Shown piece after piece: positions 1,285 through 56,400 of a DNA stretch of 64,000 nt. This stretch comes from Octopus sinensis (Eukaryota). Below the pieces are notes generated by a model that was given only the letters and a program-made list of their open reading frames with translations, was not told the DNA's origin and ran no database searches. Made by a program: the position numbers and the translations under genes. The stretch covers positions 128,464,001-128,528,000 of the forward strand of contig NC_043001.1 of the NCBI RefSeq assembly GCF_006345805.1. The letters run 5' to 3'. Within the stretch, counting starts at the first letter, position 1. The number at the start of each line of letters is the position of its first letter.

Positions 1285-1355
1285 ACATCGGTGGTTCAGT
1301 GGTAGAATGCTTTCCTTCCATGCAAGAGACTCTGGTTTGATTCCTGGCTAATACA
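1285..1355 (+). pseudogene. Degenerate tRNA-Gly copy (pseudogene or SINE head)
   Basis: ACATCGGTGGTTCAGTGGTAGAATGC...GGTTTGATTCCTGGCTAATACA aligns to eukaryotic tRNA-Gly. T-loop TTCGA is mutated to TTTGA and the stems are disrupted. Confidence 0.7.
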
Positions 1356-4530: not shown

Positions 4531-4762
4531 AAGGCGGCAAGCTGGCAGAAATGTTACCACGCCAGGCAAAATGCGTAGCCGTATTTCGTCTGCCCTTACG
4601 TTCTCAGTTCAAATTCCGCCGAGGTCGACTTTGCCTTTCATCCTTTCGGGGTCGATTAAATAAGTACCAGTTACGCACTGGAGTCGATATAATCGACTTA
4701 GTCCGTTTGTCTGCCCTTGTTTGTCCTCTCTGTGTTTAGCCCCTTGTGGGTAGTAAAGAAAT
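4531..4762 (+). mobile_element. tRNA-derived SINE, family B, with 13-bp TSD
   Basis: AAGGCGGCAAGCTGGCAGAA...GAGTTCAAATTCC-like...AAAGAAAT. TSD AGGTTCTTTTGTT at 4518-4530 and 4763-4775. Confidence 0.9.
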
Positions 4763-7059: not shown

Positions 7060-8869
7060 TTAATCATTATTCTTGTATATCTTTGTCTTGGATATATTAT
7101 TCTAAAGTAGGCATAATTTGGTTGAATGGCTAAGAAGTTTACTTTACAACCTAAAGTTCCCAGGTTCAGTATCACAGCCTGGCAAATGTCACTTTTATAT
7201 CCTTGGTTCAATTCATATTATATGAGTTAAACTGGGCAGATAGAAACTGTATAGAAGATTGTCATGGATTGTACAGATAATTCAAAAGGCACAACCTTGT
7301 TACACACTGTACCACACTGATTCTGCTTGAGAACTTCATCAAGGAGTACATGTGTCTGTGACTGCCTCATGTTAATTCAGGAGCAGATAATTCAGTTGAT
7401 CAAACTGCCGAATCCTCATAATCTCATTAGACAGTAGAGAATGGCCACCATTATTCTTTTGTTATAATATTTCCGTTGAACTAAACTGCCTATGTTTGAG
7501 TTTTGCAAATAATAAAAGTATTAGTTAAATAATTTTGTAGTTATTAAACTGGTTTTTGGTACTGAAATTAACATAAAATTTTGTTGGAGCATTTTAATTT
7601 TAAAACATGAAGTTTGTATCATAGAATTAAGGGCAGCCTTAGGTCACAAAAAAATTTAATGTCTGAACACTATTTTCAAGACTGGAGAATTTATGAGTTT
7701 TGGTTAGCTCTTGTGTTGGACAAGTCAGACAGACATCTACAGATAAGCTTGCTTGCTTGCTGAAGAAGCTCTCTATTTATTCTCTATTAAATAGAGGATA
7801 AATTTACTGTCTCTTCATCTTCCTTTCAATAGTATTGTTTCAATTCTGGTTGGATGACCAATTTTCATAATCTGTGTTTCTGTTGACTAATTTGAAGTTG
7901 AGTAAGATAACTCCAAGGAATAGATGAAGAGAGATTGTGAAATAGGATGTCACTCAGATACCCATAGCAGAAGAGATATCAGATACTACAATGATAATGA
8001 TGATGATTATATTTAAGATGATTTACATATTTAGCTACAAATCTTTTGCTGCATTCATTTAATCTAAGATGTGAATCTGTTGTACAAATAAATATTGCTG
8101 CAGTATATTTAAAAATCTGCTTAAATGATCCTAGCATGATCCATCAATCTAAGTGAAAGAGACTGATTTAACCCAGTTTTAGAGATTATTCTTCAGAATC
8201 ATTGATTTCTTAGTGTTGGAAGTGAGATTTATTTTTAGATGGACTGAAGACATTGCTTTGCTAACATAAATATAATTCAATCCTGGAAGAAGTGAAGTTC
8301 CGTTTTTTGTTTATTTGTTGGGTTTTTTTTAATACCTTCCTGTTCATTGATGATAGTTGTAAAGAAATATATCTCTTCAATCATATTTAGTGAAATGTGT
8401 GTGTGTGTGTGTGTTCATTGCTCTGGATTGGCTTCCTTAGTGCTTTATCTTCTTGCATGGTATATTTTCCTTGTTACTTTTTTTTTTTTTTTTGCTATTT
8501 GATATCTCTTCTCTTAATAAATAATGAGTTACTTCAAAGTCAACTCAAAATGTAATGGGTAGCCAAGTTCTCATTTGACTTTCCATTTCCCAGTTCGATA
8601 CTGAATCTCTTCTCTCTCTCTCTCTCTCATACACACACACACAAGAAGAAACTTTAGAAAATAAATCTGATCTCATGATAGTAGGTTGGTGTGGTGTGGT
8701 GTGGGGTGGGGTGGTGTGGGGCTTAGTTATAATTAATTATTGATTTAACTTACGGTTTTTAAAATCAAAAAAAGGCTTCACTAAATTTGAATTACATTTT
8801 GTGTAAAATAAGCTGGGTGAGGGTGTGAATGTGAGAATGGTAAAAAAAAAATACAAAAAATAGTAAGAT

Positions 8870-8980
8870 ATATATGTATGCACATGTTTATGTATACACA
8901 CACACATACACACGTGTGTATGTATATACATATATAGACAAATACATACACACACATGCACATATATATATATATACTTA

Positions 8981-9035
<55 letters not shown>
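8870..9035. repeat. Compound (CA)/(TA) microsatellite region
   Basis: Long (TA)n at about 8990-9035. It explains the YIYIY ORFs. Other microsatellites include (AAT)n 27648-27696, (TG)n near 320, 9290 and 21395, and (CT)n near 54635 and 60375. Confidence 0.95.
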
Positions 9036-9040
<5 letters not shown>

Positions 9041-9509
9041 CTATAGTTCATATTTACTCAGGTTGTATTGAATGAATGCTCTTGCACTCCTTTAAGAAAC
9101 ATGATCCAAATATAACTTCTCATCTTCCAGTTTCAGTTCTTGCTTTTTTGTTTTTTAATATTTTTTGTTTTATTTATTTAAACAAAAAAAAAAAAACGAA
9201 ACAAAAAAAAATCAGTTAAAATTTCTAGGTTTGAGCTGCTATCTTTCTATACTAACCAAATATGGTGATATGCAGTAGTGTCTCTGTGTGTGTGTGTGTG
9301 TGTGTGTGTATCAAATATACAAACACACACATGCATGTAAATCAGTAAAGATGCATAAATAATGCAATAGTACTTTTCTTAATGAGATTGAGCCATGCAT
9401 TTCCTGCGACTTTTGCAAAACTTGGCAGACGTGTTAAGCATTGCAGTTAGAGAACATTGCCCTGTGTGTGTGTGTGTGTGTTTTGCTACTGACTGCTTGC
9501 CACACAGAA

Positions 9510-12287: not shown

Positions 12288-14965
12288 TACTGTTTTTCTA
12301 GGGGTCTGAAATAGAGATCAGGGCATGTTCCTACTTAGAACTTTATTTTCAAATACCATTTGTTCTAAAATGTAACTAAGCTCCTACTCTATTATTTTAA
12401 ATACATACGTGTTTGGATCTGTGATGAACATGGTGCAGACAAGGGTACGTCAGCAATGAAGTTGTAAATGTCAAAGAATAGACTGATGAAACAACTGATT
12501 GCTTTATTGATCAAACCAATTGGTCAAGCAATTGATTAGTTAATTGGTTAGTTAGTTAACTCATTGACTTATATACAAAATGAAATAAAATCATTTTGTA
12601 ACAAAAATAAAATAGAATCAGTATGTTTTCTGAGGCAAAAGTGACCTTCCCAAAATTCAAACACCTGCTTCAACACAAAATTTCACATCAAGAATCTTGC
12701 AAAACAAACACAAATAATGAAATATAAATATAGTTGAGCAATTATTTAAGGAAACATCTATGTTTCTGCCTCTTTGTTTTCCAAGTTAGAGAAAGCATTC
12801 TCTATTTATGGGTATCAGTTATAAAACAAATAAAATGTATCTGAGCTAACCTTAGCAAGGAAACCTGTGCACAAAATAGTTTTTTGATTACACAAACTCC
12901 TTCAGAAGTGCCTGCAGTAAAAAAAGGGTTAGTCAACTTGTCATGTGTTGACCTCTGAATAAATAAACTGATCCTATTTTTTGACAACTGTTAGCAGGTG
13001 TCAGTTGAAAGGAGGACATCTAATCACGAAATCATCATCAAACTATTTGTATCATCATCACCGTCATCATCATCGTTTAGCGTCCGCTTTCCATGCTAGC
13101 ATGGGTTGGACGGTTCAACCTGGGAAGCCAGAAGGCTGCACCAGGCCCAGTCTGATCTGGCAATGTTTCTACGGCTGGATGCCCTTCCTAACGGGGGGGG
13201 GGGGGCATCCATTCAATAGAAATTTCAAGCTGAGATACAATTGCTAAGAAATTCCTGTCGCAAGAGGACTGAGACCACAGTAATTTGACAATAAATTCGC
13301 CTGAATACAGGTACAGGTATTGCTGTGTGGTTAAAAAAATTTGCTTTGCAACCACATACTTGCAGGTTCAGTCCCATTGCATGAAACCTTGGACAAGTGT
13401 CTTTGATTTGCCTGGCCAACCCATGCCTTGTGAATGGAATTGGTAGATGGAAACTATACGGAAGTCTTGTGTGTATGTATGCGTACACTGAATGTTGATA
13501 TCCCACAGCTTCAATTGTCACTATCTGGGTAAAACAGTGATATGATGTTTGCCGTCCTTGTCGACATTAGGACCAGTTGTACTTGCATTTTCAAAGACTA
13601 TTGGAATATAAGTCCTTTACTTGAAAAACAAGTAAGGGTTGGCAACTAGAAAGGCATTTACTCATAAAATACTACCTCAAATAGTCCTTGTCCAACTCAC
13701 GCTAGCATTCAAAATCAGCCATTATATATTTTTTTTTAAATGGACGTAGTTATTAGTTTTCAACAAATTATTTCTCTGAACTTATTTAAATTCCTAATTA
13801 AATTCATTCATTTAATATTGAAACTTTAGAAAAGTATCATGGTCACAATTTATCCATTTATTTTTTTCTTCCTCAATAAATCTTAGGCTTTATATTATTT
13901 GAATATTGACAAAGAGAAAGAAAACAGAGTAAGAAAGGCACAGTGGTTGTGAAGTTAAGTAGTTTGTAAGCTTTGCCACTGCATCATAAATTCAAATTTT
14001 ACTGCAGCTTTTGTAGTATGCATATGTGCAGTCTTTTACTATGATTGTCTCATTAAAAATTGAATGTAGTTACTCTCTGTTTGCTTTAGGGATTAGCTCC
14101 AGAAATGATTTTCACATAAAAATATTGGCTTCAACAATTCATGCTCACATATCCATATTTGGTAAAAAGAGTTTAAAAAAGCCATTTCACTTGTTTTGAT
14201 CAGACCCCTGATGAAAATTGATCAAGCAGACTCTAACCAAAAGCATTTCTGAAATGACCAACCCACTTTTATTGAGACATGGTATTTGGCCCCACATTAT
14301 CCAACATGTCTTCTTTTTCCTTTTTTCTTTTTTTCTTAAGAAGCAAGGTGCAATTTGAGGCAGATATGGCTCCTATTTTTAGAAGGATTTGTGACCACAT
14401 ACAGGTTTTCCTTCATTGACTGGTGTTTTCAGAAAGCTGTGAACACCATGCAATCTCATTCCACCATTCTTCACATTTGAGGATTTACATAAAAGATCAT
14501 TATTATTACCTGTATTTTCATTGTAATAAACAACACTAAGTAGCAATATCTTCTTAGTGAGTTGAATCTAAGATTATTTTCAATATCCAAGTGGTGTCAT
14601 TCATTTCACATATGTCACTAAAATCCTTAGGAAAGACAAGAACACCACATTTTCATTTTTCATCTTCCACAAATTCATAACTTCATATGTAAGAAACAAA
14701 TATTAATTTCTTCTTCATGATTGTTATTCATCTCAGATATTAATGTGGTAATTTGGTGGAATCATTACAGCATCAGAATGAAAATTACTGTGCAGCATTT
14801 AAGTTCAAATCCTGCTGTAGTCAACTTTGCTTTTCATCCCTTTGGGACGCTATAATAAAGTACCAAGCAAGCATTTAACCAACTAAAACTTTCCCCAAAA
14901 TCTCAGGCTTTGTTCTTCTATGAGAAACAATTAATTTCAGATACTTCTTGTTGTTATCATTGCAG

Positions 14966-28826: not shown

Positions 28827-29414
28827 ATGGTACTGTGGAATCTTATTCAATTGCCTTTGGAATTGTGATCCCTCATGTTTATTATATTATTGTTCTGCTT
28901 CTGAAAATTTGCATTAGTAGTGGATAAATTGAATTCAAAACTTATTGATATTGTTACTGTATTGATATTGTTATTGGCGTTAGGAAGGGCATCCAGCTGT
29001 AGAAACACTGCCAGATCTGACTGGCCTGGTGCAGCCTTCGGGCTTCCCAGACCCCAGTTGAACTGTCCAACCCATGCTAGCATGGAAAGCGGACGTTAAA
29101 CGATGATGATGATGATGATACGTTTCTACTTCATTTATTATACTGCCATCATTTTATATTGTTGTTGAACATCATTGATCTGCTCAGCTTGAGCAGACCT
29201 ATCTCTGTCATGGTGATAAATAATCAATGTGTTTTTGTTTTTTTTTGGTTATCTTTAGCATTTTTTGCCCGACATATAAGTATTACATTTGAAGTAAGGG
29301 AACCTTTATGTGGTTTGCTCAAACAACTACAGCTAGCAGCTATGTCCTTCTCAAACCACACCCCAGTTTTCAAAAGGAACACATTAAATAATGTTGTTTT
29401 GAAGTCTAGTATTC

Positions 29415-30269: not shown

Positions 30270-30510
30270 GAAAGAAGCTAATGTCATGGTCCTCAAATCC
30301 CGTTATAGTAACCTCTACATCCCTAGTGACTTTTTCCAAGCAAATTTCACATGGACTTCAGCTTTTCCTTTATATCGTCCATTCCAGCTGGGCACTGATT
30401 GTACTTTTCATGTGATGCCTAAAGACACTGAGCCTGTCAGTCTTAATGGCACTGAGTGTAGCGTACCAGCACTGGAACCTTCTGATGCTGACCATTTATA
30501 CAGTGCTAAA
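30270..30510 (+). CDS. CCAR1: CCAR1 exon (LYIPSDFF motif region)
   Basis: tttgtAG|GAAAGAA...GCTAAA|GTAAAA. KEANVMVLKSRYSNLYIPSDFFQANFTWTSAFPLYRPFQLG...DADHLYSAK. Confidence 0.97.
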
Positions 30511-30895
30511 GTAAAATATTTTTGTTTCTTCCTAGATCTTTTAGCATTAAGATTTTAAAGATTACTGTTTTGATATTATGTGTGTGTTATATATTTATCA
30601 TCATTTTCATTTGACGTTCCTTTTTTCATGCTGGTGGGATCTGGATGATTTGACAGTGGGCTGCACCAGATTATATGCCTACTTTAGCATGGTTTCTACA
30701 GCTGGATGCCCTTCTTAATGGCAACTACTTGACAGTGTACTGGATGCTCTTTATGTGGAACCAGCACTGGTGAGGTCACCAAGTACCAGCAAATTAAAAC
30801 CCCACCCTCAACTGAGGGTATAAAGGAAGGGATAAGACACTATGATAAAGGGACAAGGAGCAGGTGCAGTCTTATAATATCATATTTATATGTAT

Positions 30896-33851: not shown

Positions 33852-34144
33852 GTGATGTTACTGTCAAGTCCGAAATTAGAAGACATCTTCTCAAAGTGCT
33901 GTGGGTCAGCTGATGATAGTCCAGACAATTCCCGCAATGAACAGATCAATTACCAACACCCAACCCGTCTGATTCAGTTTCTTGTCGGGTTGAAGGGCAA
34001 AAATGAACCCATGTCTATAGGTGGGCCTTGGTCTCCATCGCTAGATGGTCCAAATCCAGCTGAGGACCCAAAAGTACTAATCAAGACTGCTATCCGTTGT
34101 ACTCGTGCCCTAACTAACATAGATCTCAGTATGTGCACACAGTG
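33852..34144 (+). CDS. CCAR1: CCAR1 exon, DBC1/Nudix-like domain
   Basis: ttccAG|GTGATG...CAGTG|GTAAGT. VMLLSSP...HPTRLIQFLVGLKGKNEPMSIGGPWSPSLDGPNPAEDPKVLIKTAIRCTRALTNIDLSMCTQW. Confidence 0.97.
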
Positions 34145-34292
34145 GTAAGTATTAGAATATTATTTTCAGTGTTTTAACTGTTGTGTTTGCTTTTGTTTTC
34201 CTTATTTTTCAGGAACTGTTCAGTTATTTTCCAGATGAACTCGGAAATTCTTGGGATTTGGACACCAGACTGCAGAAACACAAACAAATCAA

Positions 34293-34324
<32 letters not shown>

Positions 34325-35580
34325 TCCTTTTTGATTCCTTTAACGTTTTCAAGATTTTTTTTTTCTTCTTCTTTTGCATTTATCCTCTTGCAGGTAACTT
34401 GATTCTTGTTCCCTGATTTTGTCAATTCTAATTTTAGTTTGACTTCTTGTCTACAAATTAAACTCTAAATTTGATTCAAATATGTTTGTGTCTACTTGTG
34501 CACACACAAGCATCTCATTTCTTCTCTTGTATATGCACCCAAGTTGCTTTGTGTCTGTACAAAAAGCCACAAACCATTTGATATTGTGTTTGGTACTGTT
34601 GTGACAGTGAAGGTGGTGCAGATGCTAGAGAGCTAAATTTTTATGCTTTTTGACCTGTTACTTTACATTTCTGGGTAACTCAAATAAATAGTCACATTGT
34701 ACAGAAAAGGGCTTAAATTGTTTTTCCATGCTAGAGGAAAGATTACCATTGGGTTGGCTTTGCCTTTTATTCTTCATGGGCCAATAAAATGAAGTACTTG
34801 TCAAATACCAAAGTTAATGTAATTGAGTATAAATTCACTCAAAATTTCTCAGTTTATGCCTGTTATAAGTTATTAAATTGTATCAAGACAAACTTTACTT
34901 TTCATCTCTTTGGAAATTGATGAAATATCACTCAAATAACTGGTCCCTCCCCATAAATCTATAGTTTTTTGTCTTTGCTAGAAATCATCATTATTATTAT
35001 TATGAAAGTAAACAAGGTGGTTAGCTGGCAAAACCATTAGTGTGCCAGGCGAAATGCTTAGCAGCATTTTGTCCATTTTTGTGTTCTGAGTTCAAATTCA
35101 GTCAGGATGAAAGTACCAGTTGAGCTCTGGTGCCAATGTTATCGATTTAACTCCTCTCTGAAATTGCTGGCCTTGTGCCAAAATTTGAAATACTTGTTAT
35201 GAAAATAGATTTATCCTGGCAAGCTTGTTCTGCATCCCATTTGAGCTGTTCCACTTTCCTCGTAATGCTAATGGATTGAGAATAAAATAAATGTCGTGCA
35301 TAAGTTTATTGTCTTTAATATGTCTATCTGGTTATATGTATTCACTGCATCCTATTAGACAGTGGATGCAGCATGGCCAAATGGTTAAGAAGTTTGTTTT
35401 CACAACCATGTTTTCACAATCATAAGGTAGGTCTCTGGGATTGATCCCACTGTGAAACATCTTAGGGCAAGTGTTTTCTGATGTTGTTTCAGGACAACCC
35501 AAGCCTTGTGAGTGAGACTGAGTACACAGATGGACTATACCTGTAATTCAAAGGTACACCCTTCTCTCTCTCTCTCTCTC

Positions 35581-35613
<33 letters not shown>

Positions 35614-35768
35614 CACACACATTGTGTCAAGCTGATTCTGTCTGAGAATTACATAAGGGGTATATGTGTCTATGGAATGCTCAACTTGCACAAAAATTCA
35701 ATGAGTAGGCAATTTGGTTGATCTGGTTCAGCAATTGAATCCTTATCATCTAAGCTAACACAAATCTA

Positions 35769-36719: not shown

Positions 36720-36818
36720 TATGTATAGCAATGGCTGTTGTTTGAACAGTCAGATATTCAAAGTTCTCGTCCATCTTTTTAGCAAAATCTTCTTTTTTCA
36801 TTAACACCTTCCTAACAG

Positions 36819-37071
36819 GTATCGATTCGCAGAGATACGGTACATTCGTCCTGAGGAGATGCACAAGGGGCGACTGGTGCCTGCTCGTGTTGAAACTGTC
36901 GTGCTTTTCTTGCCAGATGTCTGGAGCATTCGTCCAACGTGCCTGGAGTGGGAGTCATTGAGGGCTGCCTATAAAAGTCACCTGCAGAAGAAGCTAGCAG
37001 GAAGCAGTAGCAGCAGCGTCAACAGCAGCGGTGGCACTGCCACTGATTCCAAGGATGACACAACTACTCAG
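36819..37071 (+). CDS. CCAR1: CCAR1 exon, end of DBC1 domain; 3' boundary inferred at a GC donor
   Basis: ctaacAG|GTATCGATTC. YRFAEIRYIRPEEMHKGRLVPARVETVVLFLPDVW...DTTTQ. No credible GT donor follows. CAG|GCACTC gives the phase 0 the next exon needs. The 5' end is solid and the 3' end is less certain. Confidence 0.85.
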
Positions 37072-38621: not shown

Positions 38622-40971
38622 AGGTGTTGATGTTAAACCAGGCACAGGATTGAGTCTATCACTGAAATTTCTCATCAGACAAGTTTTAGATTAACCTGCT
38701 AGCATTCAGATTACTCTGTGAAATGTAATGCTTATCTATTCACAATGGTTTAAATTAATTATGCATATTTTCTTCTGGCTTTAAGAATGATATTGTAGGG
38801 TAGGTGCAAGAGGCCAGATCTGTCTAGTTTGAACATAAAACAGGTGGAATATTTGGGCTGGATATGGCCAGATTAAATGCTTTTGGATTAAAGAATAAAT
38901 AAACCAGGGTTTTGGAATAAATATATGTTCAGACTTTGATGAAATAGGAAAAGGAAAACAATAGGTGATTGGTGCTGAAATAACTACTGATATTATCATT
39001 TTTGTCTATTTTCCTATCCTGTAAGATCCCACTCTATGGTGACTGGGGGAGGGGTAGTTTTAGTTTGTTATCAGTGTTCAGATTTGATGCATTTTGAAAT
39101 GTCTATTAATCCTTTAGCGCTCAGATTACTCTGTCAAATGTAATGCTTATTTATTAACATTTTTTTAAACTAATCATATATTATCTTATAGCTTTGAGAG
39201 CTATAAAGATGTAATTGCTTTCTTTAGAATCACATTGCAGAACAAGTGTGAGAGGCTGAATCTGCCCAGTTTAAACATAAAACAGGTAGAATATTTGGGC
39301 CAAATATGGCCAGTTTAAATGCTAAAGGGTTCAAATCTCTTTTCTTCTCTAGAAATCTATACACATATGCCGATGTCAATAATTAATGTTACCTAAACAT
39401 TTCTATTTTCAAACAATGGGATTAATGTAAGTGTTATACGTGAAATGGATGAATGGACAAGTAATTGGATCACCAGCTCATATCTTGGGAGTAATATCCT
39501 TTCAAAGGAGGCATTTTGTTATGCCTCTAAGCGGGATATTTTATATGGCCAGCTCTCAGTTCCTTCAAGCTACACAAAATAGCTGCCAGAATTTTGCACT
39601 ATCTTAAAGGCCTTTGTTTTATTTAGTTTACACTATGGCAAATGAAGTTTAGCACATTCTTATGTATTCTTGGGCTTTGTGAAAGTATTCACTTTTTAGA
39701 AGTTGGTATATGGAATCTAATGCTACTTGAAATTTAACAGCGAAATTGCAATGATTAGAGCTATTATTTTCTTGGACGTTATTCTTCACTTTACTCACTT
39801 GTCAAAACATTAATAGGTGAGTCTTAATGCTTCTAACAATTTTTAATTAGAATAAACTCATTCCTTAAACATCATATGTTAGTGTTTTTCAGTTTTGTTT
39901 ATTTGCATTTTACTTTTTTTTTATCTTATCTTTTTTTCATTGTGTGTCATGCCTTACAGTTGGTAAAATTGACAAGTTGTAGACATATACTTGAACTGAA
40001 AAGAGTTTAGTCTTTTGAGAGAAATAAATTCAATAGGAAAGAAATAGTCCATTTATGCAAGTAGTCAGGCCATCATACTTCATTTGCATAAATTTGTAAG
40101 GCTGTCCTCAAATCTTTGCATGGGCTTGGAAAAGTCATTATGTAAACAATCCTGTATATCAAAGATGACTTGAAATCTGATTAACAAACCTTTAACCTTT
40201 CGTTACCAACCCGACTGAATCTGGCTCTGGCTCTGTAGTACAAATGTCTTGTTTTCATAAGTTTTAAATTAAAATCTTCCACCATACCTTAGTCACAGTT
40301 TATGTTCCTAACACTAGCTTAATGATAACTAAGTTATTTTACTAAATCCTTTGTTATATTTATAATTAATTCAAAGAAACACAGAACATCTCAAAATAAA
40401 TACGGTAACAAAAGGGTTAAATGTTGTCTGATACAGCGTAAGGGAAAATGATAATGTGCATTATATGTTTTGTTATTTCTCTTGAGGGGTCCTATAATAG
40501 AAGTTTGGTGTGTATGAAAGAAAGATGTAGTGAGATGTTTTAGACTTGGGTGTAGTCGACTTAGAAAATTCCATTACATTTTTTAAATCATTTTCTCCCA
40601 GAATAGTTAAAGTTATTTGTGTGGGGTGGTGTATAACACACACACACACAATATGGTAAATTAACATCTACAAGTATCCATTCTCTCCTGTTAATGTTTA
40701 GACAGCATTTTAAGTTCAGGTTTTGTTTTTTGGTAATTATTTATCAAGCTTTTTCTTTCCTTTTCATTTAATTTTTAATTTTCGCTGATATCATCATCAT
40801 CATCGTCATTTAATGTCTGTTTTCCATGCTGGCATGGGTTGGATGGTTTGACAAGAGCCAGCAAGCCAGAAGATTGCACCAGGCTTCACTGTCTGTTTTG
40901 ACATGTTTTTTTATGGCTGGATGCCCTTCCTAACACCATCCACCTTACATAGTGGACATATATATTGAAAA

Positions 40972-41197
40972 GGCGGCGAGGTGGCAGAAACGTTAGCACG
41001 CTGGGCGAAATGCGTTGCCATATTTCGTCTGCCGTTACGTTCCGAGTTCAAATTCCGCCGAGGTCGACTTTGCCTTTCATCCTTCTGGGGTCGATAAATT
41101 AAGTACCAGTTACGCACTGGGGTTGATGTAATCGACTTAATCCCTTTGTCCTTGTTTGTCTCCTCTGTGTTTAGCCCCTTGTGGGTAGTAAAGAAAT
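40972..41197 (+). mobile_element. SINE family B with 14-bp TSD
   Basis: TSD ATATATATTGAAAA at 40958-40971 and 41198-41211. Confidence 0.9.
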
Positions 41198-41298
41198 ATA
41201 TATATTGAAAATTAATTCTAAATCAATTTTTCTGGGCAGATTGTTGACTGTATCTAAATAATAATGTATATTATATCTATCATTTTCTTTAATCTTTT

Positions 41299-41431
41299 GA
41301 AGTTTAATGATGATGCTACATGTGCCAGCCAGAGACCTGTCGTTGTCTCCTATTCCTTTGCTCATTGATTTTTGGGCTGTGGCACTAGATAAAACAGGAT
41401 AATGTTAGACAGTTTTGTCTGATATATCTTT
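41299..41431 (+). ncRNA. Candidate intronic box C/D snoRNA, SNORD98-like (18S rRNA guide)
   Basis: Box C ATGATGA 41307-41313. Guide TCCTATTCCTTTG 41348-41360 followed by D'-like CTCA. Box D CTGA 41419-41422. Flanks can pair (ttttgaag 41295-41302 / ctttaaga 41428-41435). The guide pairs with the conserved 18S motif UAAUGGAAUAGGA with one U-U mismatch. Confidence 0.55.
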
Positions 41432-43039
41432 AAGAACTACAAACAATCTCAGTTTCATTTTTAATTACTATTTTTTATTTACGATTTTTCTAAAGATGAC
41501 AAAGATCTGCCTCTAAGAATGAAGAGGGAGCGGGGTGAATTTTCATTACTTTTTTCCTTTAGTATCCTGGTGTTTTCACTCAATTCCTCTTTTAGGGCAT
41601 TGTATAATGAAGTCTGCACACATCGTTGATGATGAAAAATGGTGAACTGGTGTCATTTTTGCTGCTGCTTCTTCTTCTTCTTCTCTTCTTCTTCTTCTTC
41701 TTCTTTCCTCTGATCTGACCTGTTATGTGTTGTTTTAAAAGTTTACTACTTTTTATTTCAGCTGTAGGCTTCTTTTTTTTTTTTTTTTTTTTTTTTTCCT
41801 TTTCTTCCCATTCGCTAGGAACCATCAATTTCTTGCCTGGAACAACAGTGGGGATAATTTCTAAGTTTTATCTTTGTGTATATGTCAAAGAAAGAAAGAA
41901 GAGAAAGTTAGTGTGTGTATCGTGGTTATCCGTATGTGCATATCTGTGTGTGTGTGTGCATGTACACATGGTTGCCCATGTGTGTGTATGTATGTATGTA
42001 TGTGTGTGTGTATATCGATGTTTTCTTTATAGGCAACCGTGAAATGATTCTGGAATGGTGGCGATGTTAACAGTGTTGCTGGTGAAGTCAGCTGAATATT
42101 CTGTAATGGTGCACTAGAATATTCAATGAATGCATTATAATATATGTATAACATACTAAATATAAAACAATATTTAATTTCCAGAGCCAAGATAAACTAC
42201 ATTCATATCTTGGCTGTTAAATTACCTTAATAATTTGATTGCTTATATTTTTTAAGTTATTTCAACTCTGGATGGCAGTACTTTATAATTGTGTCTAAAA
42301 TTATTAAATTCTTTAAAAAAAAAAAATGTAACATATTCGCTAACTTTTTTTCTAATTAATGTTCAAACTATATTACTTTTCTTATTAACTGCAATACTTC
42401 TAAGTTTCACCTGCTTGTTGAAGGATTTTTTTCCCTTTTTCATTTTCATCATTCTGATTGGTTTATACTAAGAAGCTTTGTCACCGTTCAGCTTATTGAA
42501 GTAAATCAAACTTGTTATTATCATAATCGTATAAATATTTGTAAATAGATTTTCAGAAGAGAGGTTTCAAGTAATGATTGCGGTCTTTTACTAAGTATTT
42601 ATTCTTAACATACTGTTTTAGATTACAAGACTATCTGTGGTTGCCACTGTCAAGAATATGCATCAGTATAGAGAAAATGCTTGTTGTTTATGTTTAACCT
42701 GAGATTAGCCCTGATCCTGGAGACCTTTAACCAGATTTGTTCCAGCATGACTCTACTGTCCTTTATTTAGGCATAGTATTTTTAAGACTTCATCACCCAA
42801 AGAATTCTTTTTGAAAAATAGCAGGAGGGGTGGGAGACTTGCTTGTGACTCAGGATGATTGATACAGCTGACAGCTCAATTGCAATATCTTCATATTATA
42901 GCTGAAAATTAGCCTCTTTGTTTTGCCCCATGAAGCCTAACAGCAGTTAATGGAGCATCACTCTGTAAATTAAGAGATTGTTTTATCAGGAACAGGAGTC
43001 AGACAAATGCAGACATGATCTTTAGTATTATGACATTAT

Positions 43040-44046: not shown

Positions 44047-44276
44047 TTTTTCTTTACTACCCACAAGGGGCTAAACACAGAGAGGACAAACAAGGACAGA
44101 CAAACGAATTAAGTCGATTATATCGACCCCAGTGCGTAACTGGTACTTGTTTAATCGCCCCCGAAAGGATGAAAGGCAAAGTCGACCTTGGCGGAATTTG
44201 AACTCAGAACGTAGCAGCAGACGAAATACCGCTAAGCATTTCACCCGGAGTGCTAACGTTTCTGCCAGCTTGCCGC
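44047..44276 (-). mobile_element. SINE family B with 15-bp TSD (1 mismatch)
   Basis: CTGTAAATGGGTACC 44032-44046 and CTGTAAATAGGTACC 44277-44291. Confidence 0.88.
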
Positions 44277-45920
44277 CTGTAAATAGGTACCATTTGAGGT
44301 CCAGCTGCACATTGCTATAAGCAGCTTGAACTCAAGTGTTTCGCGTTTGCACTGTGGAAATCACTCCAGTATATCATAAAAGCCAAGGAGTATCTCAACA
44401 GCCCTAAGACTAAGTATCAGTATCATATTTATCTTTGAAGAGCAAAATCTTTGTTTGGATTTTGTGTAGTGAATTAGGTTTGATGTTCAAGTTCTATGTA
44501 TAAATTACATACAACATGGTGACTGTGAAAATGTGGTGTAATGTAGTGTTGACCAGTTGACTACAGTCATATGTTCATACCTTACTGATATAACCACTTC
44601 GTGCCTCAGAAGAAAGCAAGTAACTCTGCTTTCTCCAGATGTAAAGACAATTGCCTCATCAAAATCCCCTCACCTAGTTAAGCATAGAAATAAACAATGG
44701 AATAATTTAAGTAAAATAATTACTGGAGAGGAACAAAGTATATTCAATATCTTTATCTTTTGAAATAAAATTAGCATTGAACTTGTTTGTCACCATATTA
44801 TTAAGTACCCAAATAAATATCCTTAAAATCCTTAAAAATGTTTTAGCCCGAAGGCTGCGGCCATGCTGGGGCACCACCGCTGTTTATTTTTTATTTAATT
44901 AGAACATATCTAAATGCTACTTTATGGGATTTCTTGTTTCTGAACATTGCCAAATAAAGTTGCACGTTGATGCATGATTATTATTAGTGCCAAATGTTTC
45001 TACAGACTTGGCTATCTGCTTCCAAACTCTCATAATGTTTGCATGTATCTTTTTTACTATCAGATTTTACTGTGGCTCGAATCATTATCGTTTATTTTTA
45101 AATCTTAAGTAAACAACAACAGCAAAATTTACTCTTGAACTAGGAAACTTCAGTCATATTTAGAAAACGCATGAAAATGTTTTTCTTTTTTTTTTTCTGT
45201 TGGGTTTTTAATGCTTATATCATTATTCTTTTTAATCTTATATTCTTCTTTAATATGACGACTGTTGTATGTGCAGCTCCTGTTTGGTGTAATCACCAGT
45301 TAGTTCACCATCATTTAGACAGATGAGAAAACTTGATATTGTGTGTATGTATTGGTGTCCTATAATGTGTAATATGCCAGAGAATGTCAGGTTTTACATG
45401 AATCTGTTTTTGATTCTAGTTTAGTTTATTGTGTAAAATTTGCAACCTATTAAAAAATATATTCAAAATTACATTGTTTTCCTCATTAAATATTGAAGTC
45501 TAGTTGTGAAAAAGAACAAAATCAAATGAAAATTCGTTCACTGCTTATATATTGGTCACCAGTTTACATTGTGTGCTGACTTCACACTTCTTTTTTTTTT
45601 AATATTTTGTCTTATCTTAGCTCATGTCGCCCTTAAGCACCTTAGTATAACTGAGACTGTGAAGGGTTGATCGAAAACCCTAATGGAAACTTGCTTTCCT
45701 CTCTACTTCTTCTAATACTACTACTACTGCAGGTTTTCAGCAACACCTTGGGAATTATATGGCACAATTACTACTACAGTTTACTAACAGTAGCATAGCA
45801 GTTGCCTATAATTCTACTGTTCTTTATTTGTCTTCGTTTTGCTTTCTTCACTGTTAAATTGATATATTTGTGAGTAATGTCCCTTCTCATTTGTTTTTTT
45901 TTTGTTTTGTCACCATTTAG

Positions 45921-45992
45921 GAAGAAGAGGAAGCTATGAATACAGAAAAAGAGCCTACGCATTTTTCTGAATTGGATCCCAAAACAATGAAA
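45921..45992 (+). CDS. CCAR1: CCAR1 exon preceding SAP domain
   Basis: catttAG|GAAGAA...ATGAAA|GTTAGT. EEEEAMNTEKEPTHFSELDPKTMK matches CCAR1 PTHWSKLDPKTMK. Confidence 0.95.
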
Positions 45993-46233
45993 GTTAGTAT
46001 CAATAGGTTCTTATTATTTCAAAACATAATTAAACTTGATATATAATGAAATAGTTCCTTATATTTTATTTTTTTAAATTAGTGTATATTTTTAAACTCG
46101 TATATATAATTTTGTTGCCTAGAGGTACCAGTAGCTGTGAGTCTGGGTCATTGAGAGTTAAATGTCTTTGCCAGATATATAACTCAAAGTGCCACTGGAG
46201 ACAATAGTATTAATTTTTTAATTGGATTCTTAA

Positions 46234-46394: not shown

Positions 46395-46661
46395 TTAATA
46401 AACAATATAATCTTGATTTATTTTTTTAATAGGATACATACTATAGACCCTTTAATTATTAGACCAAATTAAATTGCTAATTAATAAATATATCCATTAG
46501 TGCTATAGAATGTTATTTACCAACAAAGTGACTAAACCAGCAAGATTTTGTCTATATCCATTTGAAATAGAGAATATCATGTTCTTGTCCTTTCTAACTA
46601 TCAGAAATTCTTTCAAGTATCTTTTAACATAATCTGTACATTTGACATAATCTGTTCACAG

Positions 46662-46802
46662 ATTGTTGATCTACGCCGAGAACTGGAAGATCGGAACTTG
46701 AGTTCTAAAGGATTGAAGTCACAGCTAATAGCTCGACTGACAAAAATTCTGAAAAGTGAGAAGGAGGAAGAAGAAGAATTAGAGAATAACAAAGCTGCAG
46801 CA
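46662..46802 (+). CDS. CCAR1: CCAR1 exon, SAP domain
   Basis: ttcacAG|ATTGTT...GCAGCA|GTGGGT. IVDLRRELEDRNLSSKGLKSQLIARLTKILKSE. Confidence 0.95.
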
Positions 46803-47249
46803 GTGGGTTTTCTTTCTTTCTTTTTTTTCTTCTTATTTTAATATTCAGAAAAGAAGGGGATGGTAGAATCTGTAGAGTGTCAGACAAATTATATTGCAAT
46901 ATTTTGCTATCATTATCATCATCATCATCATAATTTAATGTCTGTTTTCCATGCTGGCATGGGTTGGATGGTTTGACAGGAGCTGATCAGCTGAAGGACT
47001 GTTTTGGCATGGTTTCTGCAGCTGGATACCCTTCCTAATGTCAGCCTCTTTACAGAGTGTACTAAGTGCTTTTTATGTAGCACCAGCGTTTACAAACCTG
47101 CAAGATTAGGGATGTCTCTTTTAATGTGAGTTCAAATCTTGCTGAAATAAACATTACTTTTGGACCTTCCAGAATGGATAAAATAAGTCAGATTAATCAA
47201 GTAATCTAAGTGACTTTATCTGGCAGGAAAAATTTGCTTTATTATACCT

Positions 47250-47557
47250 ATTTCTTTATTACCCACAAGGGGCTAAACATAGAGGGGACAAACAAGGACA
47301 GACATAGGTATTAAGTCGATTACATCGACCCCAGTGCGTAACTGGTACTTAATTTATCGACCCCGAAAGGATGAAAGGCAAAGTCAACCTCGGCGGAATT
47401 TGAACTCCCAACGTAATGGCAGATGAAATACCGCAAAGCATTTCGCCCGGCGTGCTAATGCTTCTGCCAGCTCGCCGCCTTTCACAACGTAACGGCAGAC
47501 GAAATACTGCAAAGCATTTCGCCCGGTGTGCTAACGCTTCTGCCAGCTCGCCGCCTT
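47250..47557 (-). mobile_element. SINE family B with internally duplicated head and 19-bp TSD
   Basis: TSD AATTTGCTTTATTATACCT at 47231-47249 and 47560-47578. The segment AACGTAA..GCAGA.GAAATAC..CAAAGCATTTCGCCCGG...GCCGCCTT occurs twice. Confidence 0.88.
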
Positions 47558-51954: not shown

Positions 51955-52146
51955 GAAGAGGAGAAAAGGCGACGAGAAGAAAAAGAGCAAGCCATGATGG
52001 AACGCAAGTACAATCTGCCTGATAAACCCTCCATTATAGTCCACCCGTCAACAACTGCAAAGGGCGGCAAGTTTGACTGCACTGTCATGTCGCTTAGTGT
52101 CCTGTTGGATTATCGCCAAGAGGATAATAAAGAACATTCCTTCGAG
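51955..52146 (+). CDS. CCAR1: CCAR1 exon (conserved IIVHP...FDC..MSLSVLLDYR motif)
   Basis: tttctcAG|GAAGAG...TTCGAG|GTAAGC. ERKYNLPDKPSIIVHPSTTAKGGKFDCTVMSLSVLLDYRQEDNKEHSFE. Confidence 0.97.
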
Positions 52147-52769
52147 GTAAGCAAATCCTTCTATCAGTCTTGTTCCTCTTTGCCATAAATTATTTCATGG
52201 TGCTGTTTAGCCCCAGGTCACTCCTGAATAAGTACACCTTTGATTGTGAGCATTCCAGCTTTAACCATCTAATATGACATTATAACTATGTAGTCTTAGA
52301 TTCTTTAAGATGGTTAGGTTGTATTTAAATTGGCCATATCTGGTCCAAAATAGTCTACCAACTCCAGCCTCTCACACCTACCCTACTATGTCATTCTAAA
52401 AATAAATAGTCACATCATTGAAATCTTGAAGCTTTAAGAAAATGCATAATTAATTCAAAACGATGTAAGTAAATAAATAATCATTAGATTTGATAGAGTA
52501 ATCTGAATGTAAAAGAGTTTAGGATAAATTTGGCTGGTGTTTCTAATACATTAAGTGATCTAAGATCACCTACATTTTTTCCCTTGCAGTGTAAAATTAA
52601 TAGCCTTATACTCTTGCTTTGTTGTTGGTTTTTCTGTTTTCTGGATGTCAATATTAAGTGGTCAATGGTTAGGGCCAGGGAATAGAGAGGAGATAAAGAA
52701 CATGCAGAGCTGAACCCTCTACCATATGCCTATATATGGGCATAAAACTGGTTATAGTATAAGGGAGGT

Positions 52770-53334: not shown

Positions 53335-53930
53335 ATGGGGTTCGTGTCCGTTGCCAGATTCGCCTGGCCCCCGTGCCAGTGGCACGTAAAAGCACCATCC
53401 GTTTGTGTCTGTTGCCAGCCTCGCCTGGCCCCCGTGCCGGTGGCACATAAAAGCACCATCCGTTCGTGTCCGTTGCCAGCCTCGCCTGGCCCCCGTGCCA
53501 GTGGCACGTAAAAGCACCATCCGTTTGTGCCTGTTGCCAGCCTCGCCTGGCCCCCGTGCCGGTGGCACATAAAAGCACCATCCGTTTGTGTCTGTTGCCA
53601 GCCTCGCCTGGGCCCCGTGCTGGTGGCACATAAAAGCACCATCCGTTCGTGTCCGTTGCCAGCCTCGCCTGGGCCCCGTGCCGGTGGCACGTAAAAGCAC
53701 CATCCGTTCGTGGCCGTTTGCCAGCTCCGTCTGGTACCTGTGCAGGTGGCACGTAAAAAGCACCCACTACACTCACGGAGTGGCTGACGTTAGGAAGGGC
53801 ATCCAGCCGTAGAAACCCTGCCAGATCAGACTGGGCCTGATGCAGCCTTCTGGCTTCACAGACCCCAGTTGAACCGTCCAACCCATGCTAGCATGGAAAG
53901 CGGACGCTAAATGGTGATGATGATGATGAT
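53335..53930 (+). mobile_element. RTE 3'-end fragment with expanded 61-bp minisatellite
   Basis: Six 61-bp units at 53341-53706, then the family tail. Other copies at about 13051-13192, 28975-29118, 47778-48046, 49452-49735, 55393-55690 and 60800-61208. Confidence 0.85.
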
Positions 53931-54630
53931 CTCAAGCAGTTTTATTCAGCCCATGCAAACATGGTAAAGTTAATGATGATCTTGTGTATTTTGTGTGTCT
54001 GTGTTTGTCTCCCTATCATCGCTTGACAACTGATATTGGTGTGTTTACGTCCCCATAATTTAGTGGTTCAGCAAAAGAGACCGATAGAATAAGTACTGGA
54101 GTCTATTTGCTCAACTAAAGGCAGTGCTCCGGCTTGGCCGCAGTCAAATGGCTGAAAAAAGTAAAAGAATATATATTGCTTTATCCACAAATAAACATGG
54201 TTTATCAGATAGCATTTTGATGATAGTACAAAGCCATTGCAGCAGATTTGTAGGCATTGTACAACATAAGATCTTGGGGGTAAAATCGATATTGAGAGAG
54301 ACAATTTGAGATGAGACCGAGGCACATAAAAACATACTGTTTTACTAATCTGTCAGTTATGCTAGTAGGAAAAATGATTGTTCATATTTAACCTCTGCTA
54401 AGTCATATCAAGCAAATGTATAATCAAAGGTGTTCCAACCATGACCATCAATTCATTTTTTTTCTTTTATTTTTATTTCTACACTGCAACTAAGAACACA
54501 TTATTCAGCATGTCCTTCATTTTTAAGACAGTTTGGTATAGTTTGGATATTTGGTTACTATTTCTAGCAAACTGATTGACCATGTAGATGCACTATCATT
54601 AATATGTACAGATAGAGATTGAATTATATA

Positions 54631-54730: not shown

Positions 54731-54874
54731 GTTTCTTTGTTTGCTGAGTTGTTCAATGAAATGTTGATGAGGGATTTTGGCTTCAAGATCTACAAGGCTC
54801 TTGTTCTTGCGCCAGAAAAGAAGGATGAGGAGAAGCTTAAAAAGAAATCTGATGATAAATCTGTAAAAGAAAAG
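54731..54874 (+). CDS. CCAR1: CCAR1 exon
   Basis: ctctcAG|GTTTCT...GAAAAG|GTGAGA. VSLFAELFNEMLMRDFGFKIYKAL. Confidence 0.97.
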
Positions 54875-55728: not shown

Positions 55729-56400
55729 TGTTGGGTTGGAACAAAAGTTTTTACCATTTTTTAAGTAGAATTCAAAAACAGTATCCAGATATTTGCATGT
55801 ATCTTAATTCAACCACATATTCTCATTTTGTTCCACTACCTTTCACTATCTTTGAAGCAGCATCATGATTCCATTTTTCCTATGACATGGTATCTTTCTG
55901 GGCCATTCCGCCGAGGTCGACTTTGCCTTTCATCCTTTCGGGGTCGATAAATTAAGTACCAGTTATGCACTTGGGTCGATATAATCGACTTAATACCTAT
56001 GTCTGTCCTTGTTTGTCTCCTCTATGTTTAGCCCCTTGTGGGTAATAAAGAAATAGGTATCTTTCTGGGCCATGAACTGGTCTAAGTGGTTTTTACAGTC
56101 TTCCAAAGAATTGAAATACTTCCCAGTAAAAGGATTTTGTAAGTATCAAAAGAAATGATAAATCCAGTATTGCAAGGTCTGGTGAGTGTGGTGGGTGTCA
56201 TAGGACATCGCAGTCAAGCTGTACCAATTTCTGCTGGGTCTGCAAGGAAACATGAGGTTAAACATTTTCTTGAAGGGAGACAACACGTTTCCAATTGGCC
56301 AATTCTGGACATTTTTCATCGATTGCCTCCTTTAATCGGTCTAATTGGGAGCAGTATTGTCTGAATTCAGAGTCTGATTTTGCAGAAGCTCGTGACACAC
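55729..56400 (-). mobile_element. Mariner transposon fossil 3, interrupted by a SINE
   Basis: Minus strand NQTLNSD...QLDRLKEAIDEKCPELAN...HPPHSPDLA...GIMMLLQR..KVVEQN. TIR-like TTGGGTTGGAACAAAAG at about 55731. Confidence 0.85.
55907..56055 (+). mobile_element. 5'-truncated SINE family B inserted in a mariner fossil, 18-bp TSD
   Basis: TSD GGTATCTTTCTGGGCCAT at 55889-55906 and 56056-56073. Confidence 0.9.

What the first reader, a model, noticed from the sequence alone, without database searches (positions are those of the whole stretch)
41295..41435. Candidate SNORD98-like C/D snoRNA inside octopus CCAR1
Seen: box C ATGATGA (41307), guide TCCTATTCCTTTG with D'-like CTCA (41348-41364), C'-like TTGATT, box D CTGA (41419-41422), and an 8-bp pairable terminal stem. 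The guide is complementary to the conserved 18S segment UAAUGGAAUAGGA with one U-U mismatch, and the D'+5 rule points to the first G of GGAAUAGG. Recalled knowledge: human SNORD98 lies in a CCAR1 intron, carries UCCUAUUCCAUUG-CUGA and guides 18S Gm867. Inference: the host-snoRNA pairing may be conserved between vertebrates and cephalopods, here apparently in a different intron. The A-to-T change in the guide may mirror a cephalopod 18S substitution. Caveats: the C-to-D span (116 nt) is longer than human SNORD98, and a GTGCCA-GCC/GGC-TGGCAC hairpin could enclose the guide.
Basis: partly seen in the sequence, partly recalled or inferred. Interest (0 to 1): 0.75.

Follow-up and report, generated by a model that had tools for sequence, protein, structure and literature searches.

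The report
Divergent SNORD98-like snoRNA in octopus CCAR1
An intron of this invertebrate CCAR1 gene carries an enlarged, somewhat degraded-looking relative of SNORD98, the small RNA that sits in vertebrate CCAR1 and guides one ribosomal RNA methylation; this suggests an ancient gene–guest pairing, but neither expression nor activity has been shown.

Summary
The host is a CCAR1 gene on the + strand. I recovered real SNORD98 from primate and sturgeon CCAR1. Its five conserved blocks (C, guide, D', C' UGUGGAA, D) all occur in the octopus sequence, in the same order, each with at most one mismatch. The guide plus D' matches at 15 of 17 bases.

This is unlikely to be chance. In 1000 shuffles, 1.3% gave the 17-mer and 0.1% gave a guide flanked by box C and CTGA. 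It is also the only C..D pair on the + strand with an 8-bp flanking helix.

It still fails the formal family test. Rfam RF00607 gives no hit even at E<=10, the spacers are 2-5 times longer, and the vertebrate host intron does not exist in octopus. Four things argue against activity:
- a U-U mismatch next to the target nucleotide;
- a G-to-C change in D';
- an A-to-C change in C';
- a stable hairpin that sequesters box D.

The octopus 18S sequence, cephalopod conservation and expression could not be tested.

Verdict: probably a true SNORD98 homologue. Whether it is an active guide or a relic is open. Interest is moderate.

The parts
41295..41302 (+). 5' arm of the flanking (external) helix, TTTTGAAG
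   Evidence: It pairs with 41428-41435 (6 Watson-Crick pairs plus 2 G-U), read directly. This is the only C..D pair on the + strand with a helix of >=8 bp.
41307..41313 (+). Box C, ATGATGA (a perfect RUGAUGA)
   Evidence: Vertebrate SNORD98 has AUGAUGU at this place.
41314..41347 (+). Extra 34-nt spacer between box C and the guide; vertebrates have 6-7 nt here. It holds GUGCCA (41322-41327) and the hairpin GAGAC/GUCUC (41332-41349).
   Evidence: Inference: the spacer is looped out. Eukaryotic C/D RNAs tolerate long spacers (PMC7229835).
41348..41360 (+). D' guide, TCCTATTCCTTTG. It matches the primate SNORD98 guide at 12 of 13 bases and is complementary to 18S GGAAUAGGA.
   Evidence: The duplex to the SNORD98 target is -14.1 kcal/mol over 9 contiguous bp, against -17.7 for primate.
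41361..41364 (+). D'-like box, CTCA (vertebrate CUGA; G to C)
41378..41384 (+). C'-like box, TGTGGCA (vertebrate-conserved UGUGGAA, 6 of 7). It overlaps the UGGCAC arm that can pair with 41322-41327.
   Evidence: The chance of such a match within the 48 available positions is about 0.08.
41385..41418 (+). Spacer between C' and box D, 34 nt (9-10 nt in vertebrates). No target is assigned. Its 3' part forms the 5' arm of a hairpin with box D.
41419..41422 (+). Box D, CTGA
   Evidence: It is the only CTGA between D' and 41500.
41402..41425 (+). Competing 10-bp hairpin (AUGUUAGACA / UGUCUGAUAU) that sequesters box D
   Evidence: -10.0 kcal/mol, z = -4.84, 0 of 200 shuffles as stable. Two of the pairs are G-U, so the hairpin is stronger on the + strand RNA.
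41428..41435 (+). 3' arm of the flanking helix, CTTTAAGA
36814..37002 (+). CCAR1 exon upstream of the host intron (end of the DBC1 domain). The 3' boundary was not mapped exactly.
   Evidence: tblastx to the primate locus, 70% identity.
45930..45999 (+). Approximate position of the next CCAR1 exon (...EKEPTHFSELDPKTMK), which closes the ~8.9-kb host intron
   Evidence: Translation and motif search. It matches human ...THWSKLDPKTMK, which I recalled from memory. Boundaries are approximate.

Best explanation
The element is an intron-encoded box C/D small nucleolar RNA gene. It is homologous to vertebrate SNORD98 and lies on the sense strand of CCAR1.

Inferred mechanism:
- It is transcribed as part of the CCAR1 pre-mRNA.
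- Box C (41307-41313) and box D (41419-41422) are brought together by the 8-bp flanking helix and form a kink-turn. This is bound by Snu13, Nop58, Nop56 and fibrillarin.
- Exonucleases trim the excised or cleaved intron to a mature RNA of about 120-125 nt, roughly 41303-41427.
- The spacer upstream of D' (41348-41360) pairs with 18S rRNA 5'-GGAAUAGGA-3'. That places the first G, the equivalent of human G867, opposite the fifth nucleotide upstream of D' for 2'-O-methylation.
- The element lies about 4.2-4.5 kb from either splice site. Assembly would therefore depend on the flanking helix rather than on proximity to the branch point.

What is shown: the motifs, their order, their similarity to real SNORD98, and the host gene. 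What is inferred: expression, RNP assembly and methylation.
For: - Real SNORD98 was recovered from primate CCAR1 (RF00607, 84 bits) and from sturgeon CCAR1. These define five conserved blocks.
- Octopus has all five blocks in the same order, each with <=1 mismatch: C 6/7 (and canonical), guide 12/13, D' 3/4, C' 6/7, D 4/4.
- Chance estimates: 17-mer with <=2 mismatches on the sense strand in 1.3% of shuffles; guide plus box C plus CTGA in 0.1%. Empirical context rates in the window are 0.024 for box C, 0.278 for CTGA and 0.079 for the C'-like match.
- It is the only + strand C..D pair with a flanking helix of >=8 bp.
- The same simple filter (guide core with <=1 mismatch, box C upstream, CTGA downstream), run over the + strands of the window, the primate locus and five other CCAR1 loci (about 197 kb), returned only the true primate SNORD98 and this element.
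- The host is the same gene and the same strand.
- The element is single copy and not part of the adjacent SINE.
- It forms a local GC island: 43% GC against 20-22% in the flanks.
- Eukaryotic C/D RNAs of 60-300 nt, with imperfect C'/D' boxes and long looped-out spacers, are known to be functional (PMC7229835).
Against: - No RF00607 hit, even at E<=10 on a 321-nt query, nor anywhere in the window.
- The spacers are 34, 13 and 34 nt, against 6-7, 7-8 and 9-10 nt in vertebrates.
- There is a U-U mismatch at spacer position 4, next to the nucleotide that selects the target. This leaves the target G at the end of a 9-bp helix.
- G to C in D' and A to C in C' both remove a partner of the sheared G-A pairs.
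- Box D is buried in a significantly stable hairpin (-10 kcal/mol, z = -4.84).
- The vertebrate host intron is absent in octopus and in every invertebrate-type CCAR1 exon call examined. Orthology therefore requires movement within the gene.
- Five other non-vertebrate CCAR1 loci show no SNORD98 and no sense-strand guide core within 10 kb of the DBC1 exon.
- There are no data on expression, conservation or octopus 18S.
Confidence: 0.55

Rival explanations
1. It is a decaying relic of a SNORD98-family gene. It is truly homologous but no longer an active guide, either not accumulating as a snoRNP or accumulating without methylating 18S. The function would be lost, or supplied by another copy elsewhere in the genome.
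For: - Each of the three internal functional blocks carries one change in a critical place: U-U next to the target, D' CUCA and C' UGUGGCA.
- Box D is locked in a hairpin with z = -4.84.
- The spacers are greatly expanded.
- The covariance model does not recognise it.
- The site is variable and substoichiometric even in human (PMC8393311).
Against: - Boxes C and D are both perfect, and an 8-bp flanking helix is retained. Neutral decay should have hit these as readily as the internal blocks.
- Imperfect C'/D' boxes are common in active eukaryotic snoRNAs (PMC7229835).
- If octopus 18S has A at the position opposite the mismatch, the duplex is as strong as in primate (-17.6 kcal/mol).
Confidence: 0.25
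2. It is a chance assembly of short motifs in AT- and pyrimidine-rich intron DNA, with no relation to SNORD98 and no RNA product.
For: - The 13-mer alone with <=1 mismatch occurs in 8.8% of shuffles.
- ATGATGA and CTGA are frequent: 40 and 263 copies on the + strand.
- There is no covariance-model hit and no significant global fold.
- A metagenome scan shows that a box C plus 15-mer guide pattern does turn up by chance in unrelated DNA: 27 loci, none resembling SNORD98.
- Some of the features, namely C' and the helix, were noticed after the fact.
Against: - Guide plus box C plus CTGA on the sense strand occurred in only 0.1% of shuffles.
- Multiplying in the C' match (0.079) and the >=8-bp helix (about 2 of 57 C..D pairs) pushes the joint chance below 1e-5.
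- All of this occurs in the one gene where SNORD98 was expected beforehand.
Confidence: 0.12
3. It is an expressed box C/D RNA derived from SNORD98 whose role has shifted away from 18S methylation. For example, it could be an orphan snoRNA that pairs with nearby intron or host pre-mRNA sequence and influences CCAR1 splicing, or one that targets another RNA.
For: - The 18S guide is weakened.
- There is new internal sequence and structure.
- Intronic snoRNAs that regulate host splicing by pairing with adjacent intron sequence have been reported. I know this only from a title in the reference list of PMC11014333 (Bergeron et al. 2023); I did not read the paper.
Against: No alternative target was identified. 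No rRNA or other sequence was available to screen the second spacer (41385-41418), so it remains unassigned. There is no direct evidence of any kind.
Confidence: 0.08

Closest known systems
SNORD98 (HBII-419), Rfam RF00607, the vertebrate box C/D snoRNA in a CCAR1 intron that guides 18S-Gm867
   Same: - Same host gene and same strand.
- Same order of five blocks.
- Guide identical at 12 of 13 bases, and guide plus D' at 15 of 17.
- Same register, so the same target G is selected.
- The unusual C' (UGUGGAA) is recognisable as UGUGGCA.
   Different: - No covariance-model hit.
- 116 nt from box C to box D, against about 57-59 nt.
- Spacers 2-5 times longer.
- A to U in the guide next to the target-selecting position.
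- D' is CUCA and C' loses its final-pair A.
- It sits in a different intron, two exons downstream. The vertebrate host intron does not exist in octopus.
- It is deep inside an 8.9-kb intron, whereas in primate SNORD98 ends roughly 130 nt before the start of the tblastx match to the next exon.
Long eukaryotic box C/D snoRNAs with imperfect C'/D' motifs and looped-out spacers
   Same: The size, the degenerate internal boxes and the extra spacer sequence all fall within the range described for functional eukaryotic C/D RNAs: 60-300 nt, with spacers that can loop out (PMC7229835).
   Different: Those examples have demonstrated expression and activity. Here nothing is shown beyond the sequence, and box D is predicted to be sequestered.
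GtNM-R5, a Guillardia theta nucleomorph C/D snoRNA predicted to target the SSU position equivalent to human G867
   Same: Its predicted target, SSU-A1040, is listed as equivalent to human SSU-G867/SNORD98, and it also uses a D' guide (PMC6461891). This suggests the site is targeted in distant eukaryotes.
   Different: It comes from a different lineage and genome, and the target nucleotide is A rather than G. No host-gene relationship applies, and no sequence comparison was made here.

Membership tests
Box C/D snoRNA (generic) | Box C RUGAUGA near the 5' end | tested here: met
   ATGATGA at 41307-41313.
Box C/D snoRNA (generic) | Box D CUGA near the 3' end | tested here: met
   CTGA at 41419-41422. 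However, it is predicted to pair within a 10-bp hairpin, z = -4.84.
Box C/D snoRNA (generic) | Terminal or flanking helix that juxtaposes boxes C and D | tested here: met
   8 bp, 41295-41302 with 41428-41435 (6 Watson-Crick plus 2 G-U), offset 4-5 nt from the boxes. It is unique among the 14 + strand C..D pairs. The pairs directly next to the boxes are weak (A-U, U-A, U-U, U-A, G-U).
Box C/D snoRNA (generic) | Internal D' and C' boxes able to form a kink-loop | tested here: inconclusive
   D' is CUCA and C' is UGUGGCA. Each loses one residue of the sheared G-A pairs. Imperfect internal boxes are common in eukaryotes (PMC7229835).
Box C/D snoRNA (generic) | Antisense element of about 9-10 bp or more to a target RNA, with the modified nucleotide opposite the fifth position upstream of D or D' | tested here: inconclusive
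   There are 9 contiguous pairs (spacer positions 5-13) to GGAAUAGGA, at -14.1 kcal/mol. A U-U mismatch at position 4 puts the target G at the end of the helix. The target sequence was inferred as the complement of the vertebrate guide. Octopus 18S was not available.
Box C/D snoRNA (generic) | Accumulates as a discrete RNA bound by fibrillarin, Nop56, Nop58 and Snu13 | not testable with these tools
   No expression or RNP data are reachable.
SNORD98 (Rfam RF00607) | Covariance-model score at or above the gathering score of 50 bits | tested here: not met
   No RF00607 match at gathering, at E<=10 on 41200-41520, or at E<=10 over the whole window. Positive control: 84.4 bits in the primate CCAR1 locus.
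SNORD98 (Rfam RF00607) | D' guide UCCUAUUCCAUU(g) placed so that the fifth-nucleotide rule selects the first G of GGAAUAGGA (18S G867) | tested here: met
   12 of 13 bases identical, in the same register relative to D'. The one difference is A to U at spacer position 4.
SNORD98 (Rfam RF00607) | Conserved C' box UGUGGAA | tested here: inconclusive
   UGUGGCA at 41378-41384, 6 of 7. The chance of such a match in the available interval is about 0.08.
SNORD98 (Rfam RF00607) | Intronic, on the sense strand of CCAR1 | tested here: met
   Exon mapping by tblastx against primate CCAR1. The host intron is bounded by exons at 36814-37002+ and about 45930-45999. Human SNORD98 is assigned to CCAR1 in PMC6466398.
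SNORD98 (Rfam RF00607) | Located in the intron that splits the DBC1-domain exons, just before ...FLVGMKGK... | tested here: not met
   That intron is absent. 33852-34148 is a single ORF in octopus, and the same is true of eight other invertebrate-type exon calls.
SNORD98 (Rfam RF00607) | Compact size of about 65-69 nt | tested here: not met
   116 nt from box C to box D, so about 120-125 nt predicted for the mature RNA.
SNORD98 (Rfam RF00607) | 2'-O-methylation at the G867-equivalent that depends on the snoRNA | not testable with these tools
   This needs RiboMeth-seq plus a knock-out or knock-down.

The most novel reading that the evidence does not exclude
The CCAR1-SNORD98 host-guest association predates the split between protostomes and deuterostomes and has survived in a cephalopod. 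This would have happened even though the intron that hosts SNORD98 in vertebrates is absent there. The snoRNA would have moved between introns of the same gene, doubled in length, and still be an active guide. It would work either on an 18S that co-varied at the U866-equivalent or through a mismatch-tolerant duplex.
Probability: 0.4. Interest if true: 0.5.

Novelty: new member of a known kind. Interest (0 to 1): 0.4.

Why it matters
If real, this would be a SNORD98 homologue outside vertebrates that standard covariance-model annotation misses. It would also be a clear case of a snoRNA staying in its host gene for more than half a billion years while changing introns.

That bears on how snoRNA-host associations are maintained: by selection for co-expression with the host rather than by positional inertia. 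It also gives a concrete cephalopod locus for testing mismatch tolerance next to a methylation site, which sits beside a pseudouridylated position in human.

Deep conservation of snoRNA hosts and movement of snoRNAs within genes are already accepted ideas, so the result would extend them rather than overturn anything.

Tried and rejected
1. Rfam in gathering mode and in permissive E-value mode, on the window and on the 321-nt region. No SNORD98 or other C/D family hit at the locus.

2. Reaching the orthologous region in related cephalopods through ORFs that overlap the candidate.
   - An exact look-up of the 64-aa minus-strand ORF found nothing.
   - A homology search with seven concatenated local ORFs found nothing at E<=10.
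   - This also shows that no known protein is encoded there.

3. A metagenome scan for box C plus guide. It returned 27 loci, all unrelated chance matches in what look like bacterial contigs. None was a vertebrate or cephalopod SNORD98.

4. Five non-vertebrate CCAR1 loci from ENA long contigs. None had SNORD98 or a sense-strand guide core. The species are unknown, so this evidence is weak.

5. A second guide-like site at 28841 (2 mismatches). It has no boxes and lies beside tandem repeats, so I rejected it.

6. Other C..D pairs with flanking helices, at 53914-54030 (+) and 13038-12905 (-). Both lie in ATGATG-rich ends of SINE copies, so I rejected them.

7. It starts only 1 nt after D', and TGTGGCA is the homologous block.

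8. Identifying the species from the run accessions of the closest contigs. No paper mentions them.

9. Evidence for the G867-equivalent in Drosophila. No supplement is held and the main text says nothing relevant. 'Me18S-G962' was a guess from memory and found no paper.

10. Octopus 18S. None of the tools gave a route to it.

Full report
**Observation**

The sequence read confirms every motif at the stated coordinates:
- box C ATGATGA at 41307-41313;
- TCCTATTCCTTTG at 41348-41360, followed directly by CTCA at 41361-41364;
- CTGA at 41419-41422, so box C to box D spans 116 nt;
- GTGCCAGCC at 41322-41330 facing GGCTGTGGCAC at 41375-41385;
- an 8-bp flanking helix, 41295-41302 with 41428-41435 (6 Watson-Crick pairs plus 2 G-U), offset 4-5 nt from the boxes.

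The region is single copy in the window. A SINE-like repeat with many copies ends near 41206 and does not include it.

**Host gene**

I ran tblastx between the window and a primate CCAR1 locus (L001). It maps + strand exons at:
- 30280-30513;
- 33852-34148;
- 36814-37002;
- 46659-46796 (SAP);
- 52000-52149 (LAIKA);
- 54731-54874.

A further small exon...THFSELDPKTMK, lies near 45930-45999. Homologues of the exon translations carry DBC1 and LAIKA Pfam domains, and one is named CCAR1.

The candidate is therefore on the sense strand, in the middle of an intron of about 8.9 kb. It is roughly 4.2 kb from the donor and 4.5 kb from the acceptor. I could not verify the species name. The closest exon match is an unnamed Logan contig that is 75-87% identical in intron DNA.

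**Positive control and direct comparison**

Rfam finds SNORD98 (RF00607, 84.4 bits) in the primate locus at L001 4724-4790:

GAGUUAUGAUGUGUGUAAAUCCUAUUCCAUUGCUGAAAUGCAGUGUGGAACACAGUGAACUGAACUC

A sturgeon CCAR1 locus holds the same RNA (L034 41813-41881):

CUGUGGAUGAUGUUAAAAAUCCUAUUCCAUUUCUGAAACUAAAAUGUGGAAUAAACUAUACUGACACAG

Between these two, and in the Rfam consensus, five blocks are conserved: box C, the guide, D' CUGA, an unusual C' UGUGGAA, and box D. The octopus sequence has all five in the same order, each with at most one difference.

| Block | Octopus | Match to vertebrate |
|---|---|---|
| Box C | AUGAUGA | 6/7 (octopus is the canonical form) |
| Guide | UCCUAUUCCUUUG | 12/13 |
| D' | CUCA | 3/4 |
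| C' | UGUGGCA (41378-41384) | 6/7 |
| Box D | CUGA | 4/4 |

Human SNORD98 is assigned to 18S-G867 and to host gene CCAR1 in PMC6466398 and PMC8393311. Because the guide has the same register relative to D', the fifth-nucleotide rule selects the same G.

**Chance**

In 1000 dinucleotide-preserving shuffles of the window:
- the 13-mer with <=1 mismatch on the + strand occurred in 8.8%;
- the 17-mer guide plus D' with <=2 mismatches occurred in 1.3%;
- a guide hit with box C within 70 nt upstream and CTGA downstream occurred in 0.1%.

Empirical rates from the real window agree: box C context 0.024, CTGA context 0.278, and a C'-like match in the available interval 0.079.

Among the 14 box C..CTGA pairs on the + strand, only this one has a flanking helix of >=8 bp. 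A simple guide-plus-boxes filter (guide core with <=1 mismatch, box C upstream, CTGA downstream), run over the + strands of the window, the primate locus and five other CCAR1 loci (about 197 kb), returned only the true primate SNORD98 and this element.

Some features were noticed after the fact. Even so, the joint probability is far below what the prior expectation of SNORD98 in CCAR1 requires. I put pure chance at about 0.12.

**Evidence against membership and against activity**

- RF00607 does not match at E<=10 on a 321-nt query, nor anywhere in the window.
- The spacers are 34, 13 and 34 nt, against 6-7, 7-8 and 9-10 nt in vertebrates.
- The guide's single change (A to U) sits at spacer position 4, next to the position that selects the target. 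Against the SNORD98 target the duplex is 9 contiguous pairs at -14.1 kcal/mol, with the target G at the helix end. The primate value is -17.7. If octopus 18S had A there, the value would be -17.6.
- The opposing rRNA base is U866, which is itself pseudouridylated in human (PMC5733568).
- D' G to C and C' A to C each remove a partner of the sheared G-A pairs.
- Box D lies inside a 10-bp hairpin (41402-41425, -10 kcal/mol, z = -4.84, 0 of 200 shuffles). This would compete with kink-turn formation.
- The whole-element fold is not unusual.

**Mitigating points**

Eukaryotic C/D RNAs range from 60 to 300 nt. They often have imperfect C'/D' boxes, and extra spacer sequence can loop out. Spacer position 1 is not used for pairing, and 9-10 bp duplexes are efficiently used (PMC7229835).

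From general knowledge, not tested here: mammalian C/D snoRNAs far from the branch point rely on flanking helices for splicing-independent assembly. That fits an element deep in a long intron with an 8-bp external helix.

Perfect boxes C and D and the retained helix are not what neutral decay predicts. The element also forms a local GC island, 43% against 20-22% in the flanks.

**Intron position**

In primate, SNORD98 lies in the intron just before ...FLVGMKGK.... In octopus the two flanking exons are one ORF (33852-34148). The same fusion is seen in eight other invertebrate-type exon calls.

So the vertebrate host intron is absent here, and orthology requires relocation within the gene. Five non-vertebrate CCAR1 loci of unknown species show no SNORD98 and no sense-strand guide core within 10 kb of the DBC1 exon. 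This lowers the prior for deep conservation but does not test cephalopods.

**What could not be done**

I found no route to octopus 18S, to the orthologous intron in other cephalopods, or to any expression data. ORF-based look-ups and a metagenome pattern scan all failed.

**Verdict**

- Most likely (0.55): a true but divergent and enlarged SNORD98-family box C/D snoRNA gene that still works as the guide for the G867-equivalent.
- Next (0.25): the same homologue as an inactive relic.
- Chance: 0.12.
- A shifted function: 0.08.

It should not be filed as a member of RF00607 by the model criterion. By anatomy, however, it works like SNORD98 and is best called a new, divergent member of a known kind. 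Interest is moderate.

Noticed in passing
window 33852-34148 (+); L001 4263-5095: The intron that hosts SNORD98 in primate and sturgeon CCAR1 is absent in octopus, where the two exons form one ORF. The same fusion is seen in eight other invertebrate-type exon calls (P0007, P0018, P0042, P0045, P0050, P0063, P0069, P0076). This suggests either a vertebrate-lineage intron gain or a loss in the non-vertebrate lineages these exon calls come from.
   Followed up: partly
window 41402-41425 (+): A 10-bp hairpin (8 Watson-Crick pairs plus 2 G-U) that contains the putative box D. It is far more stable than shuffles (z = -4.84). The two G-U pairs make it specific to the + strand RNA. Its role, if any, is unexplained.
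   Followed up: partly
L034 41813-41881; L001 4724-4790: In vertebrate SNORD98 the guide (UUCCAU) is predicted to pair with the RNA's own C' region (AUGUGGAA). In octopus the C'-like block pairs instead with the inserted GUGCCA at 41322-41327. The significance is unknown.
   Followed up: no
window 1285-1355 (+): An Rfam tRNA match (33.8 bits, just above gathering) that ARAGORN does not call. It looks like a decayed tRNA-Gly-like pseudogene or the head of a tRNA-derived SINE.
   Followed up: partly
window 40787-40943 and 40969-41206, with many copies elsewhere (e.g. 47243-47482, 4531-4763, 44049-44278, 55905-56063): Two families of SINE-like repeats, 70-90% identical, are scattered through the CCAR1 introns on both strands. 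Their ATGATG-rich ends create spurious box C motifs, for example at 53914-53930 and 13030-13045.
   Followed up: partly
window 8866-9041, 9278-9353, 41926-41986: Sub-threshold Rfam hits to mir-297, mir-466, mir-3149 and similar families fall on (TG/CA)- and (TA)-rich microsatellites. These are low-complexity artefacts, not miRNA genes.
   Followed up: no
window 35510-35628 (+): A weak match to the plant C/D family snoZ178 (28.9 bits against a gathering score of 100) in a microsatellite-rich part of the preceding CCAR1 intron. It is probably chance.
   Followed up: no
window ~45930-45999 (+): A small CCAR1 exon encoding ...EEEEAMNTEKEPTHFSELDPKTMK that tblastx missed. I found it by motif search. 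It defines the 3' end of the host intron.
   Followed up: partly
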